Positions 20,842-33,622 of a DNA stretch of 64,000 nt are shown here, in pieces. Source of the DNA: Camelus dromedarius. Lineage: Eukaryota. The DNA lies in the NCBI RefSeq assembly GCF_036321535.1, contig NC_087459.1:9300001-9364000 (forward strand), written 5' to 3'. Each line of letters begins with the position of its first letter. Position 1 is the first letter of the stretch. The notes under the pieces are model-generated. The model saw only the letters and a program-made list of their open reading frames with translations, made no database searches and was not told where the DNA came from. A program made the position numbers and the translations under genes.

Positions 20842-23800
20842 ATGGGCACCTGGGCCTTCCCCACAGCCCTTTTCCTGCTCTGCCTGACTTCTGAAAGCCT
20901 GCAAGGCGGTGAGGGCGGGCGACAGGGCTGCGGGCAGGTCTGGGCAGCTGAGGTTGGGGCTGGGGTTTAGGCAGAGCATTGGGCCAGGTGCTGGGGCTCC
21001 AGAGGGAGTGGAGGGTCAGTGAAGTACGGCTGGGCAGGGTCTTGGGAGACAGAGATAGATGCCTGGGGCCTGCCACCTCTCTGTCTCTGGGGTCCCTGCC
21101 CTAAGTCAGCACCCGCCTTGCTCTCTAGGGCTACCTCCATTGTCTCCTAGACTAGGGAAAGGTAAGTGACCCTCCCGGCTCCAGGGTCCAAGAAGACAGC
21201 CTGGTCTCTCCCTCCCAGGGCTCTGGGAGCTCTCTGGAGGAGAACCCCAGATATTCCCTGCTCTGGGATCCGGATGTGGGGCCCAGGAGAACACAGGTCC
21301 CACCCTGTTCTCCTGACAGGCAGCCTTGTTCATGGTCAGCTCAAGTGTGAGGAGCACAGACACCACAAACCCTTGGAACAGAGCTGAGATGGGGCAGAAC
21401 CTCAGCTCCTGGTGTCAGAACATCAGTGCCCCAGAGGAAGGGGCCTGGAACTGGGTCTTGAAGGAGGGCAGGTTGTGACAGGACAGGGGAAGGACATCGC
21501 TGGCAGTGAGATAGGACAAAGGCCTGGAGGTGGGACAGGAAGAGAGGAGAGGAGGTGAGCTGGAGCAGGGGCCAGGGTGGGGTGTCCTCAAGGATCTTCC
21601 CTTCAGGGACATGGGTGACCCTGCAGGTGGGAGAGGGGCTCCCTCCTGAGACCTGACACATGTAAGCTGCAGGAGAGCAAGACTGGGGGGGGTGCTGAGG
21701 GATGAGAAGGGCCTTTGAACCCCACCCTTCCTGCAAATCCCATCCTGCTCAGAATGGGCAGGGGACAGGTGCACCCAGCCCTGGAGGAGGTGGGGGATCT
21801 GCCCCCTAGAGTGCGGCCCAGATGCCTCCCTTCATGCCAGGGACCCTTCAGTTTCTGCTACCCCAACCACCGGTCTGCTCACCCTGTGATGTGACCACCA
21901 GGGAACCCAAGGCCCAGAGAGAGGGGTGCATTCTCAATTTGCAAGGAGCATCTGGGTTCAGCTCACTTTGCTGCCTCCTAGGTCACTCCCTCTTCCCAAC
22001 CCCACAGGCTTAGGAGGCCCCAATGGCTACCGATCAGGTAAAGCTGGCTGAGGGGTGGGTGGGCAGGGAGAGGGACAGCTCTGTGTCCTCTGGAGGGGAC
22101 TGAGCACCCCAGCTCCTGGCCCGTCCTGCCCCCCAAGCTCAACTGCCCCTTTCCCCCACAGGCTATGACCCTTCCAGTGGTCTAGGAGCAGGTAAGGCAG
22201 GGCCAAAGGGGACTTGGGTCTGGGGGAAGCAGCCATCTCCAAAATACATGGGGGCAGCACAGAGGCCCCCAGGCAGAGAAGCCCACCTGCCACCCTTCCT
22301 GCAGGCCTCCTCCCCTCCCTTCTGCACATCCCCCCCTCTCCGCCCCCGGGAGTCTATGGAGACCTTCCTGGTGTCATCTCACTTGTGTACCCTGCCCACC
22401 CTGGGGGTACAACTTTTTCCTGTCCCTGCCTGTTCCCTGCGTTGCCCACTGAACCCAACTCCAGGCCGGGCACTGGCTCACTGCCAGGCCATGCGTCAGC
22501 TAGGCATGGAAAGAAGGGAGGGAGTGGGCTCCCAGGGGCTCCTCCTGCGCCCTCCACCCTCCTTGGAAAGGATGGACTGAAGCTAATTTCTCACGGACCC
22601 TCTGCTCAGAATGGCTATGAAGTGGAGAGGATCCCGGTTCTCTCACCCGCTCACTGGATCTCCCCCAGGCTTCTGAGAGGGTGTTAAACCTCAGAAGCCA
22701 GGTGGACCCTGCCTGGGCCCCAAGATCTCTCTGTCTCTGCATCTTTCTCTCACATTCCTCACCTCTCCCTTCCCCCAGGATTCCAGAATGGGCGCGGGCT
22801 GGGAGCCCAACCAGGTGAGAGCCTTGGGGGCTGGGCATTGCCTTTCTGCCTCCCTCCCAGGCCTCAGAAGGGAAGGGCAGGTTTGGTGGATGATTCCAGG
22901 AGGTCGGGGGACGGATAGACAGCCTTTAGGTTTGCTGTTTCTTGTGGGGTCCAAGGGTCCTGCACCCTACCCCAAACTTACCTAGTTCATGGCTTTCTCT
23001 CTTCCCAGGCCCTCCAGCTCAGAATGGCTATGGGACAGGTAGAAGTGGGGCCAGGGTTGAGGGGAGCAGAGATGGGGCCAGGATTCTAGGGGCATCCCTG
23101 ACACTTGGTCTCCTGAGACCCTCCCTTGATCCCCATCTCCTTCTCAGGCATTGGAGGGGGCGTGAAACCCCAGAAGCCAGGTGAGCCCTCATCCTGCCTG
23201 TCTCTCCTCTTCTCTGTGCCCCACCCCTCCCCTCATTTCTCCTTTACTCCTCCCTGACCCCCTCCTGCCCTGTTTTCTCAGGGTTTAGGAACAGGAATGG
23301 GCTAGGAGTAGGGGCCTTCCCAGGTGCTGCTGCCCAGCCAGGTGAGGTGGGGGAAAAGGGGTGAATATGGATATTGGGGGGTGGAGGGGATACAGATGGT
23401 CAGCATTCCGAGATGCTTCTCCCAGGCTCCCCCAGGGCAGAACTGGAGACTCACTGGAGGCAGAGGGAAGGACCATAAGGGTTCCTGTTGACTGATTTGG
23501 GGAGCAGAGAAAAAGGGCCCCTCAGCTTCACCCTCACCTCAGATAGGACCCCAAATGCCCCCCACCTTACCCCTCAGCTCAGCACAGCTATGGAGCCCCA
23601 GGAAGAGGCTGGATCCCTGGGGGTCCCCTCAACTACTGCATCTCTCTCCCCAGGCTTTGGAGAGGGAATAAAACCCCAGAAGCCAGGTGAGACCTGCTCC
23701 TTGACCGCCCTCCCCTCTGTCCACCTTGCCATCTATCTGCCTTTTGAAGCCCCAGCCCCACTCCACTACCCACCCATCCTTCCCTGGCTCTGTCTCCCCA

Positions 23801-32800: not shown

Positions 32801-33622
32801 TGCCCTGAAGCCTGGATATGGGGCTAGAAGTGCATATCCAAGAGGTGAGGAGCCAGCCAGGTAATGGGATGTGTCAGAGTGTTGTCGGGGGTCAGGTGGC
32901 TGTGGGGAACTGGGCCCAGCCTTAGAGCCCATTTTACAGCCCTGCAGAGATGGAGGGACGGCTCTTGGGGCAGAGGGAGTAGGAGGCACACAGGAGGGAA
33001 CAGGCCGGAATGGACAGCGGTGGAGGGAATGCAGGCAGAGCAGGGGATGCTGAGTGTGAGCTTGGATGCCTGGATGCCAGACCCAGACAGGGGTGGGGCG
33101 TGATGGACCTGGAGTGGGGGCCGCTGGGGACTCAGTACTCCCACCTTCTGTCCCTCCCACCAGGGCCCTATGGGCAGCTGAGGCCAGAGCTGGGCCCTGG
33201 GCCCTCTGGTGAGTGGGGGTCTCCTAGGGCTGAGGTAAAGCTGGGGTGGGCAGGAGGATCCTGAAGACCTCTTGTTTCCTGGGTGCCCTGACTTGTCTGT
33301 GTGTGCCTTAGGGGGCCCCGAGGTGAAGAGAGGCAGCAGTGGCCCACTGGGAAATGGCTATGGAGGTGAGAGGAGACACAGTGCCCATCCCCCACTCTCC
33401 CCATGTCACCATTGTCACCCCTCCAGGCTGCACTGGGGGGTGCCCCTAGCCCTCAGGAGGGATAATAGGCTCTCAGGCCACCTGTAGGTGTCTGCTGGGT
33501 GACTAGCCTGAGACCAGAGGAGCGGGAGGGCTCCTGTCCCCCAACAGGAGAGAAGGGGGCCAGAGCTCACCAGTGCCCTGCTCTGCCTCTTCCCAGGCCG
33601 CTGCCCTTTTGGGAACTGCTGA
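20842..33622 (+). CDS. GREP1: Glycine-rich extracellular protein 1; about 47 phase-1 micro-exons, ~656 aa if all intact exons are joined
   Basis: Signal-peptide exon 20842-20908 ([22 protein letters not shown]). Intact AG/GT exons: 21129-21161, 22162-22191, 22779-22814, 23009-23038, 23148-23180, 23282-23341, 23654-23686, 23802-23855, 23999-24031, 24148-24207, 24645-24674, 24771-24803, 24895-24954, 25115-25147, 25271-25306, 26044-26073, 26159-26191, 26297-26326, 26445-26474, 27026-27055, 27140-27172, 27266-27301, 27495-27524, 27607-27639, 27911-27946, 28380-28409, 28591-28635, 28854-28883, 29143-29172, 29275-29307, 30075-30128, 30269-30301, 30386-30421, 30516-30548, 30651-30686, 30990-31121, 31359-31403, 31688-31729, 31834-31866, 32269-32331, 32418-32447, 32535-32594, 32746-32844, 33164-33208, 33312-33365, 33597-33622 (GRCPFGNC*). 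Sum 1971 nt, no stops. Lies between PKMYT1 and CLDN9 as human GREP1/LINC00514 does. Confidence 0.85.
22669..22701 (+). pseudogene. GREP1 KPQKP-type cassette exon carrying an in-frame TGA
   Basis: cag|GC TTC TGA GAG GGT GTT AAA CCT CAG AAG CCA G|gtggac; the paralogous exon at 23654 reads GC TTT GGA GAG GGA ATA AAA CCC CAG AAG CCA G. Confidence 0.7.
29329..30000 (+). mobile_element. MER21-like solo LTR in a GREP1 intron
   Basis: ttcctggcacaga...gggaatttcctaagtga; ccctgtgggatctgatgccgtctccaggcagatagtgtcagacttgagttaaattgtaggacac. Confidence 0.7.

What the first reader, a model, noticed from the sequence alone, without database searches (positions are those of the whole stretch)
20842..33622. GREP1 looks like an unrecognised ancient paralogue of tropoelastin (ELN)
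Seen: a signal peptide, then about 46 exons of mostly 30-63 nt. Every internal exon is a multiple of 3 and is flanked by phase-1 introns, nearly all splitting a Gly codon. Twelve exons carry K-P-x-K, alternating with Gly/Pro hydrophobic exons ([16 protein letters not shown]). The last exon has two cysteines. Established (recalled, needs checking): ELN has all phase-1 symmetric exons; its exons 3-5 are 30, 33 and 36 nt; exon 4 is the KP cross-link domain ALGPGGKPLKP; ELN lies near CLDN3/CLDN4 on 7q11.23, close relatives of CLDN6/CLDN9. Here the 33-nt exon 30516-30548 encodes [11 protein letters not shown] (8/11 identical to that ELN exon), the module sizes are also 30/33/36, and the gene abuts CLDN9/CLDN6. 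Inference: GREP1 is an ELN ohnologue that expanded the exon 3-4-5 module. It would be a second lysyl-oxidase- or transglutaminase-cross-linkable elastomeric matrix protein (rich in K and Q, no poly-Ala KA domains). I cannot check whether this link is published.
Basis: partly seen in the sequence, partly recalled or inferred. Interest (0 to 1): 0.92.

Follow-up and report, generated by a model that had tools for sequence, protein, structure and literature searches.

The report
GREP1 gene with elastin-like architecture
This stretch is the camelid copy of the already named gene GREP1, a secreted glycine-rich matrix protein built from about 48 tiny exons much as elastin is, but whether it is elastin's ancient sister gene is still only an attractive, unproven idea.

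Summary
Window 20842-33622 (+) carries a 48-exon gene. Exon 1 encodes a signal peptide. All 46 internal exons are multiples of 3 and phase 1:1, and every exon ends in G. Thirteen exons carry K-P-x-K, and the last exon encodes GRCPFGNC. It is the GREP1 orthologue: 94% identical to the Camelus bactrianus GREP1 model, which uses the same exon chain. It lies between PAQR4 and CLDN9/CLDN6.

The recalled elastin facts check out in papers: all ELN splice sites are phase 1:1, exons 3-5 are 30/33/36 nt, exon 4 matches 8/11, and ELN sits three genes from CLDN3/CLDN4. I add one parallel. In both proteins the only two mature-chain cysteines lie in a tiny last exon with C-x4-C spacing (GGHCPLGKC against GGACLGKAC).

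Sequence similarity does not clearly exceed the low-complexity background. The ELN exon 3-6 segment gives p=0.16. Exon 4 gives p=0.006 before correction for 34 exons. Exons 3 and 5 are not significant.

GREP1 is hydrophilic, basic and rich in Gln/Asn, unlike elastin. The 120 relatives listed were all placental. Non-placental presence and full ELN comparisons could not be tested.

Verdict: a known gene. The ELN-ohnologue reading is unpublished, plausible at about 0.4, and unproven.

The parts
20842..20908 (+). Exon 1: start codon and signal peptide ([22 protein letters not shown]), ending in phase 1
   Evidence: The same N-terminus heads many GREP1 orthologues. Signal-dependent secretion was shown for human GREP1.
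21129..22191 (+). Exons 2-4 (21129-21161, 22008-22037, 22162-22191): N-terminal non-repeat exons of 33/30/30 nt
   Evidence: They are 74-76% identical to eight orthologues.
22779..30686 (+). Exons 5-38: array of three module types. A is 30 nt ([10 protein letters not shown]-like). B is 33 nt (G-x-G-G-G-x-KPQKP). C is 36-60 nt (GYGNGLG[AGAFPG]xGAQP). Exon starts: 22779, 23009, 23148, 23282, 23654, 23802, 23999, 24148, 24329, 24645, 24771, 24895, 25115, 25271, 26044, 26159, 26297, 26445, 27026, 27140, 27266, 27495, 27607, 27911, 28380, 28591, 28854, 29143, 29275, 30075, 30269, 30386, 30516, 30651.
   Evidence: Intron-inclusive tandem duplication is visible, e.g. 27023-27441 ~ 28377-28775, 71% identity over 432 bp. 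B exons never adjoin each other.
30516..30548 (+). Exon 37, 33 nt, [11 protein letters not shown]: the copy most like human ELN exon 4 (ALGPGGKPLKP after phase adjustment), 8/11 identical
   Evidence: Shuffle p=0.006 before multiple-test correction.
30990..31121 (+). 132-nt phase 1:1 exon ([24 protein letters not shown]...), probably a cassette exon; not in my 48-exon model
   Evidence: It is present in orthologue models P0008, P0010, P0013, P0041 and P0089 but skipped in the Camelus model P0048.
31359..31403 (+). Exon 39 in its 45-nt form ([15 protein letters not shown]); a 33-nt alternative acceptor lies at 31371
   Evidence: P0048 and P0010 use the 45-nt form.
31688..33365 (+). Exons 40-47 (31688-31729, 31834-31866, 32269-32331, 32418-32447, 32535-32594, 32746-32844, 33164-33208, 33312-33365): less repetitive C-terminal part
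   Evidence: Exon 45 alone retrieved GREP1 models from 1.84 billion proteins. Alignment coverage against orthologues is 0.75-1.0.
33597..33622 (+). Last coding exon, GRCPFGNC plus stop: holds the only two Cys of the mature protein, spaced C-x4-C
   Evidence: 74 of 122 GREP1 models end in C-x4-C, most often GGHCPLGKC.
33751..33756 (+). AATAAA about 130 nt after the stop: possible poly(A) signal (unverified)
   Evidence: Read directly.
22669..22701 (+). Degenerate B-type pseudo-exon with an in-frame TGA
24318..24352 (+). B-type exon whose normal acceptor is out of frame in this genome; only a weak 24-nt form (24329-24352) keeps the frame
27721..27760 (+). C-type pseudo-exon that has lost its GT donor (end approximate)
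28484..28503 (+). Remnant of a B-type exon inside the duplicated unit 28377-28775 (coordinates approximate)
1401..3150 (+). Two exons of the upstream neighbour PAQR4 (1401-1568, 2905-3150)
   Evidence: tblastn with pig PAQR4-GREP1 read-through models P0111 and P0113 gives 82-96% identity.
43276..43929 (+). CLDN9, single exon, 217 aa
   Evidence: Pfam PMP22_Claudin, E=1.5e-28. It falls in the same 90%-identity cluster as human claudin-9.
45258..45923 (-). CLDN6, single exon, 221 aa
   Evidence: Pfam E=1.1e-26. It clusters with camelid claudin-6.

Best explanation
[quoted passage not shown] It is a known gene for a secreted, intrinsically disordered matrix protein. The gene grew by tandem duplication, introns included, of a three-exon module (30 nt, 33 nt and 36-60 nt) inside a chain of phase-1 introns. 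Because every internal exon is phase 1:1, any exon can be skipped without breaking the frame, which explains the dozens of predicted isoforms.

Shown here or in papers: the exon chain; the match to annotated orthologues; secretion of the human protein; its co-precipitation with fibronectin and EMILIN2; and mouse expression in the inner annulus fibrosus.

Inferred: the mature chain of about 600 aa (G 28%, P 15%, Q+N 12%, K 5.6%, net charge +37, GRAVY -0.63) stays hydrated and disordered. Aromatic residues about every 10 positions, in Gly-rich spacers, may give weak multivalent self-association. The 13 evenly spaced K-P-Q-K-P lysine pairs are candidate covalent cross-link sites. Cross-linking could be by lysyl oxidase, as in the KP domains of elastin, or by transglutaminase, since Gln and Lys sit in the same motif. 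The C-terminal C-x4-C loop may dock the protein to matrix partners, as elastin's last domain does.

In gene architecture it is elastin-like. In chemistry it is not: it is hydrophilic, KP-only, and lacks poly-Ala and RKRK. Its evolutionary origin is unresolved. My odds are about 0.4 for a true ELN ohnologue, 0.45 for independent origin and 0.07 for a later ELN-derived copy, with the rest unaccounted for.
For: Exon model and phase. Enrichment over the rest of the window. Orthologue identity and colinearity (P0048 94%; 120 GREP1 relatives, many named GREP1, including a human 'isoform 3 precursor'). Intron-inclusive duplications. Conservation concentrated on G, P, K, Q, Y, W and C. Composition. 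No collagen G-X-Y periodicity. No Pfam domain on record for any GREP1 relative listed. No PDB relative. Secretion, glycosylation, cleavage, and fibronectin/EMILIN2 binding of human GREP1: bioRxiv 10.1101/2020.03.10.981001. Grep1 in inner annulus fibrosus: PMC13082079. Elastin parallels.
Against: No transcript data for this species; the only read-laying run failed. The N-terminal 19 exons are supported only by orthologues from other orders. Exon 13 and some weak-site exons (19, 31, 32) may not be used. Cross-linking, self-association and the role of the Cys loop are all inference with no experiment behind them. The published human phenotype (GDF15 induction, breast-cancer dependency) says nothing about a structural role.
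Confidence: 0.85

Rival explanations
1. GREP1 and ELN are ohnologues from the vertebrate genome duplications. An ancestral signal-peptide, phase-1 micro-exon, Lys-pair gene with a Cys-pair last exon sat next to a claudin pair. One copy became hydrophobic elastin (next to CLDN3/4). The other became the hydrophilic KP-only GREP1 (next to CLDN9/6).
For: The phase 1:1 rule is the same in both genes. Lys-pair exons alternate with Gly-rich exons in both. The 33-nt KP exon matches 8/11 with the motif at the same place in the exon. The 30/33/36-nt exon sizes of ELN exons 3-5 equal GREP1 modules A/B/C. The only two mature-chain Cys lie in a tiny final exon, C-x4-C after GG, with a shared LGK; gapped shuffle p=0.007. 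ELN is three genes from CLDN3/CLDN4, and GREP1 is 9.7 kb from CLDN9/CLDN6. The closest fish relatives of this CLDN9 are annotated claudin-3/4-like. The nearest foreign cluster by language-model features is 'elastin isoform X3', score 0.92. From memory, not tested: 16p13.3, 7q11.23, 12q24 and 22q11-12 share other paralogue pairs (KREMEN2/1, BICDL2/1, MMP25/17, LIMK1/2, CLDN5).
Against: The ELN exon 3-6 segment does not beat shuffles (p=0.16). Exons 3 and 5 are not significant. Exon 4's p=0.006 becomes about 0.2 after correction for 34 exons. The camelid C-terminus is not significant. Automatic names for GREP1 orthologues vary: collagen-like, elastin-like, fibroin-like, spidroin-like, Gly-rich cell wall protein-like. 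So the elastin similarity is no better than that to unrelated low-complexity proteins. The C-terminal part gives no elastin hit by features. Composition violates tropoelastin invariants: it has W, H, M and 12% Q+N, only 3% V, and no RKRK. All 120 relatives listed are placental. A survey of 51 jawed-fish genomes reported a single eln gene in non-teleosts (PMC12733013).
Confidence: 0.4
2. Independent origin with convergent architecture. GREP1 arose in the mammalian or placental lineage by amplifying short exons inside a phase-1 intron that followed a signal-peptide exon. The Gly/Pro composition, the lysine pairs and the terminal disulfide are convergent or chance resemblances to elastin.
For: Only placental orthologues were seen. 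Similarity is at the low-complexity level. Intron-inclusive tandem duplication explains the array without any ELN template. From general knowledge: introns after signal-peptide exons are typically phase 1, so any exon amplified there must be 1:1. The splice consensus (exon ending in G, next exon starting with G) by itself yields G|GN Gly codons. The chemistry is very different.
Against: It needs several coincidences at once: the same exon length and motif position for the KP exon, the 30/33/36 size trio, a Cys pair confined to a mini last exon with the same spacing, and a position next to the claudin pair most closely related to ELN's neighbours.
Confidence: 0.45
3. Later ELN-derived copy. A partial duplicate of ELN's 5' hGG/KP exons and its last exon was inserted at 16p13.3 in an early mammal and then amplified.
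For: The resemblance is confined to ELN exons 3-6 and the last exon. It is consistent with a placental-only distribution.
Against: The copy would have landed next to the claudin paralogues by chance. There is no residual nucleotide or significant protein similarity, although some would be expected from a duplication only 100-200 million years old.
Confidence: 0.07
4. Collagen-like protein, as suggested by many automatic names and by the composition comparison in the naming paper.
For: High Gly and Pro content. 'Collagen alpha-like' names occur on several orthologues. The naming paper compared GREP1 composition with the collagen alpha-1 family.
Against: No run of five or more G-x-y triplets occurs anywhere. 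The longest strict run is three triplets. Exons are phase 1, not the phase-0 54-nt type of fibrillar collagens (general knowledge).
Confidence: 0.01

Closest known systems
GREP1 / LINC00514 / mouse 1520401A03Rik (Prensner et al., bioRxiv 10.1101/2020.03.10.981001)
   Same: Orthologous gene: same neighbours, same signal peptide, same KPQKP repeats and C-terminus, and 94% identity to the Camelus bactrianus model.
   Different: Nothing essential differs. This copy has a few degenerate exons and an F/N variant of the C-terminal loop (GRCPFGNC against the common GGHCPLGKC).
Tropoelastin (ELN)
   Same: Signal-peptide exon followed by dozens of short phase 1:1 exons. Lys-pair exons alternate with Gly-rich exons. 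There is a KP-type motif in a 33-nt exon. Exon blocks grew by replication. Cassette splicing is extensive. The only two mature-chain Cys sit in the last small exon with C-x4-C spacing. A classic-claudin pair lies nearby.
   Different: GREP1 has no KA/poly-Ala domains and no RKRK. It has V 3% and A 8%, whereas tropoelastin is dominated by G, A, P and V. It has 12% Q+N and contains W, H and M, which tropoelastin lacks. It is hydrophilic and strongly basic. It is not next to LIMK1. No statistically secure sequence similarity was found.
Resilin-type hydrated elastomers, as discussed in bioRxiv 10.64898/2026.08.28.747957
   Same: Composition rich in Gly, Pro, Gln, Asn and Tyr; disordered repeats; 2P+G of about 0.52-0.60, near the elastomer threshold as I recall it.
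   Different: No homology is expected, since resilin is an arthropod protein. Resilin cross-links through Tyr, whereas GREP1's conserved reactive residues are Lys pairs and Gln.
Transglutaminase-substrate repeat proteins (SPRR, loricrin, trappin 'cementoin' repeats); comparison from memory
   Same: Short tandem motifs carrying both Gln and Lys in a Pro context.
   Different: Those are single-exon or few-exon epidermal or seminal genes with no micro-exon structure. This resemblance was not tested here.

Membership tests
GREP1 orthologue group | Strong full-length similarity to, and the same exon chain as, annotated GREP1 | tested here: met
   P0048 is 94% identical and colinear. 120 relatives have E-values from 1e-197 to 1e-45.
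GREP1 orthologue group | Position between PAQR4 and CLDN9/CLDN6 | tested here: met
   PAQR4 exons lie at 1401-3150, CLDN9 at 43276 and CLDN6 at 45923. Pig read-through models PAQR4-GREP1 exist.
Tropoelastin family | All coding splice sites phase 1:1 (PMC12554196) | tested here: met
   All 47 introns are phase 1.
Tropoelastin family | Alternating hydrophobic and Lys-pair cross-linking exons of KA and KP type | tested here: inconclusive
   Thirteen KPxK exons alternate with Gly-rich exons. There are no KA exons, and the spacer exons are polar/aromatic rather than hydrophobic.
Tropoelastin family | C-terminal domain holding the only two Cys and ending in RKRK | tested here: not met
   The Cys pair is present with C-x4-C spacing. 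The tetrabasic tail is absent in all GREP1 models.
Tropoelastin family | Composition dominated by G, A, P and V; no His, Trp or Met in the mature chain (PMC12554196) | tested here: not met
   G+A+P+V is 54%. W, H and M are present. Q+N is 12% and GRAVY is -0.63.
Tropoelastin family | Sequence similarity to ELN above the low-complexity background | tested here: inconclusive
   Only human ELN exons 3-6 and the last exon could be used. Segment p=0.16; exon 4 p=0.006 uncorrected; C-terminus p=0.007-0.07. Full ELN sequences could not be fetched.
Tropoelastin family | Synteny with LIMK1 (PMC12554196, PMC12733013) | tested here: not met
   No LIMK1 was identified; the neighbours recognised are PAQR4 and CLDN9. 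This is what an ohnologue would show, so it bears on orthology only.
Tropoelastin family | Lysyl-oxidase cross-linking and coacervation | not testable with these tools
   This needs biochemistry.
Collagens | Long uninterrupted G-X-Y triplet repeats | tested here: not met
   No run of 5 or more triplets.

The most novel reading that the evidence does not exclude
GREP1 is the surviving second member of the elastin gene family. On this reading it is a 2R ohnologue of ELN that kept the ancestral phase-1 micro-exon plan, the KP lysine-pair exon and the Cys-pair last exon. It then evolved into a hydrophilic, basic, Gln/Lys-rich cross-linkable matrix protein of fibrocartilage and other tissues. Elastin would then no longer be a singleton in mammals, and GREP1 would show what the pre-hydrophobic ancestor of elastin looked like.
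Probability: 0.4. Interest if true: 0.8.

Novelty: already known. Interest (0 to 1): 0.5.

Why it matters
Elastin is treated as a gene without paralogues outside teleosts, and its origin in jawed vertebrates is unexplained. A sister gene would give an outgroup for reconstructing how the hydrophobic and cross-linking exon pairs arose. It would also point to a second lysine-cross-linked elastomer-like protein in mammals. GREP1 has so far been studied only as a 'non-canonical ORF' cancer dependency, and that would be recast as matrix biology, in line with its expression in the inner annulus fibrosus and its binding to fibronectin and EMILIN2. No paper in the searched library mentions vertebrate GREP1 together with elastin. 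If the link is false, the gene is still a clean example of convergent evolution of an elastin-type gene plan.

Tried and rejected
1. The spliced 626-aa protein has no reference, so it could not be given to the database tools. In-frame read-through references found nothing useful: one search gave one intron-read-through ORF, and local phmmer tests with read-throughs failed.

2. A single-exon HMMER query (exon 45) gave only partial GREP1 models. These served as handles.

3. One search listed only the best 120 of 155 hits, all placental GREP1. Whether ELN or non-placental relatives were among the hidden 35 is unknown.

4. The last protein search (CLDN9) was meant to give non-mammalian CLDN6/9 anchors. 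Its top hits were fused double-claudin fish models.

5. Gar, bowfin and pipefish claudin loci (L001-L006) contain no Gly-rich micro-exon arrays. One pipefish cluster lies next to METTL27-like genes, but no eln lies within 10 kb. The shark and bichir loci came back without DNA. One look-up was wasted on a wrong stop-codon trim.

The run index also cannot find spliced micro-exon mRNA, because 31-mers barely fit inside the exons.

7. MAFFT of single-exon rows mixed the module types, so no usable exon profile was made.

8. Paper searches for claudin paralogons and for a 7q11/16p13 paralogy found nothing usable.

9. PDB and Pfam gave nothing. The collagen reading was rejected.

10. The search of earlier findings had no elastin note for this genome.

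
Full report
**What is there**

Reading window 20700-33800 and scanning for AG...GT intervals in phase 1 gives a 48-exon gene on the + strand.
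- Exon 1 (20842-20908) encodes [22 protein letters not shown] and ends after the first base of a codon.
- All 46 internal exons are multiples of three: 33 nt x14, 30 x13, 36 x6, 60 x4, 54 x3, 45 x2, and single exons of 24, 42, 63 and 99 nt.
- All 47 introns are GT-AG, 82-846 nt long and phase 1.
- Every donor-side exon ends in G. The split codon is Gly 44 times, Ala twice and Val once.
- Thirteen exons carry K-P-x-K.
- The last exon (33597-33622) encodes GRCPFGNC and the stop.
- The spliced product is 626 aa.

The same scan finds 49 Gly-rich phase-1 candidates inside the gene against 13 in the remaining ~115 kb of both strands. It finds none to eight, all inside claudin ORFs, in six fish control loci. 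The pattern is therefore not chance.

**Identity**

Exon 45 alone (33 aa), searched against 1.84 billion proteins, recovered partial GREP1 models. A search with one of them returned 155 hits, of which the best 120 were listed. Most carry source names: about half are called GREP1 outright and the rest carry other automatic names for the same gene. One is a human 'isoform 3 precursor'.

The closest is Camelus bactrianus GREP1 (P0048). It is 94% identical, and its residue chain equals my exons 20-48, with three differences: it skips exons 31 and 38 and uses the 45-nt form of exon 39. Other species also use a 132-nt exon at 30990-31121.

CLDN9 and CLDN6 ORFs lie 9.7 and 11.6 kb downstream, and PAQR4 exons lie upstream. 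The CLDN6 cluster is camelid, so the window is from a camelid. The gene is thus real, annotated and already named.

**Internal history**

Self-comparison shows duplications that include the introns. For example, 27023-27441 matches 28377-28775 at 71% over 432 bp and spans exons 23-25 against 29-30 plus a decayed B exon. Several decayed exon copies remain, at 22669, 24318, 27721 and about 28484.

Across eight orthologues the best conserved residues are G, P, K, Q, Y, W and C. V, I, T, R and D are poorly conserved.

**The elastin facts**

- A curated study of amniote tropoelastins states that all splice sites in all species are phase 1:1. [quoted passage not shown]
- A preprint prints human ELN exon by exon from UniProt P15502. 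Exons 3, 4 and 5 have 10, 11 and 12 residues, and exon 4 is the KP domain. After moving the split codon to the downstream exon it reads ALGPGGKPLKP, which is 8/11 identical to window exon 37.
- The human gene order is STX1A ABHD11 CLDN3 CLDN4 METTL27 TMEM270 ELN LIMK1 (PMC6393686).

In both proteins the only two Cys of the mature chain lie in a very small final exon that begins in phase 1. They are spaced C-x4-C and preceded by GG. The commonest GREP1 ending among 122 models is GGHCPLGKC, and 74 models end in C-x4-C. ELN ends GGACLGKACGRKRK.

**Is the similarity more than low complexity?**

I could use only the short human ELN pieces printed.
- A 50-residue ELN segment (exons 3 to early 6) against 12 GREP1 proteins scores 75. 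Shuffled versions score 67.6 +/- 7.1 (p=0.16), and the reversed segment scores 71.
- Ungapped against this window's protein: exon 4 gives 8/11, p=0.006; exon 3 gives p=0.59; exon 5 gives p=0.17. With 34 ELN exons to choose from, 0.006 is not secure.
- The 8/11 copy is the best of 13 or more. The consensus B exon G-[FLI]-G-G-G-[VM]-K-P-Q-K-P gives 6-7/11.
- The C-terminal exon gives p=0.007 with mild gap costs and 0.067 with default costs for the consensus. The camelid variant is not significant. These shuffles already grant the two Cys.
- Source names for GREP1 orthologues include elastin-like, several collagen-like forms, fibroin-like, spidroin-like, spicule-matrix-like and plant Gly-rich cell-wall-like. 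Ordinary searches therefore see elastin no better than they see unrelated low-complexity proteins.
- By language-model features the nearest non-self cluster is 'elastin isoform X3' (0.92). The less repetitive C-terminal third finds only GREP1 clusters.

**Chemistry**

The mature chain has G 28.5%, P 15.1%, A 7.6%, L 6.5%, Q 6.5%, K 5.6%, N 5.5%, F+Y 7.5% and V 3.1%. Net charge is +37 and GRAVY is -0.63. Aromatic residues recur about every 10 positions. This is not the hydrophobic G/A/P/V chemistry of tropoelastin. It also violates tropoelastin's invariants, because W, H and M are present and RKRK is absent. There is no collagen triplet periodicity.

**How it probably works**

Shown: signal-dependent secretion, glycosylation, cleavage, and co-precipitation with fibronectin and EMILIN2 for the human protein; strong, SOX9/ADGRG6-dependent expression in the mouse inner annulus fibrosus.

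Inferred:
- It is a hydrated, disordered chain. Its 2P+G of 0.52-0.60 lies near the elastomer threshold of Rauscher et al. as I recall it; the framework is described.
- The 13 regularly spaced K-P-Q-K-P pairs are covalent cross-link sites. One route is lysyl oxidase, by analogy with elastin KP domains. The other is transglutaminase, because Q-x-P is a preferred TG2 context (from memory) and Lys is the amine donor.
- The Cys loop may be a docking element.
- Phase 1:1 exons allow cassette splicing. NCBI lists isoform numbers up to X40 in one species.

**Origin**

For ohnology: the stacked coincidences of architecture, KP exon length and motif position, the 30/33/36 size trio, the terminal Cys exon, and the neighbouring claudin pair. 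The closest fish relatives of this CLDN9 are annotated claudin-3/4-like. From memory, 16p13.3 shares other paralogue pairs with 7q11.23, 12q24 and 22q11-12.

Against ohnology:
- There is no secure sequence signal, and the chemistry differs.
- Every listed relative is placental, covering all four superorders but no marsupial or non-mammal.
- A 51-genome fish survey saw one eln gene in non-teleosts.

Two general points weaken the phase argument. Introns after signal-peptide exons are usually phase 1, so exons amplified there must be 1:1. The splice consensus itself favours G|G junctions.

My attempts to look at non-mammalian loci failed for lack of anchors. I put ohnology at about 0.4, independent origin at 0.45 and a later ELN-derived copy at 0.07.

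**Novelty**

The gene is known (HGNC name, RefSeq, Prensner et al.). That paper compares it with collagens and never mentions elastin. No paper in the library holds vertebrate GREP1 together with elastin. The hypothesis therefore appears unpublished, but it is not demonstrated here.

Noticed in passing
window 36375-37169 (+): A Pro/Leu-rich ORF in a GC-rich block between GREP1 and CLDN9. Its translation recurs at the C-terminal end of several long 'GREP1' gene models from other mammals (P0116, P0049, P0117, P0108), so it is conserved and sometimes fused to GREP1 by gene predictors. It has no Pfam match.
   Followed up: partly
window 22669-22701, 24318-24352, about 27721-27760, about 28484-28503: Decayed copies of module exons (in-frame stop, lost acceptor, lost donor, remnant). 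The array is turning over in this lineage.
   Followed up: partly
P0111 and P0113 (pig), against window 1401-3150 and the gene: UniRef entries named PAQR4 are read-through fusions of PAQR4 exons with GREP1 exons. This is a likely annotation artefact, but it confirms the gene order.
   Followed up: partly
window 9779-13113 and 34001-36000: Two AT-rich blocks (GC 0.34-0.38) in an otherwise 0.55-0.63 GC window. The first holds four N runs. They are probably interspersed repeats and were not examined.
   Followed up: no
one search hit list; loci L001-L006: Many fish 'claudin-3-like' or 'claudin-4-like' proteins of about 375 aa are two tandem claudin genes fused in one model, and they outrank true single claudins in a search. 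Gar and bowfin carry long same-strand claudin arrays. One pipefish array abuts two METTL27-like genes, echoing the human CLDN4-METTL27 order.
   Followed up: partly
window 59972-60724 (-): An ORF with a weak HAP1_N match (E=2.6e-4, below the Pfam cut-off). It looks like the first exon of a BICD-like adaptor, as expected for BICDL2 at this locus. Not verified.
   Followed up: no
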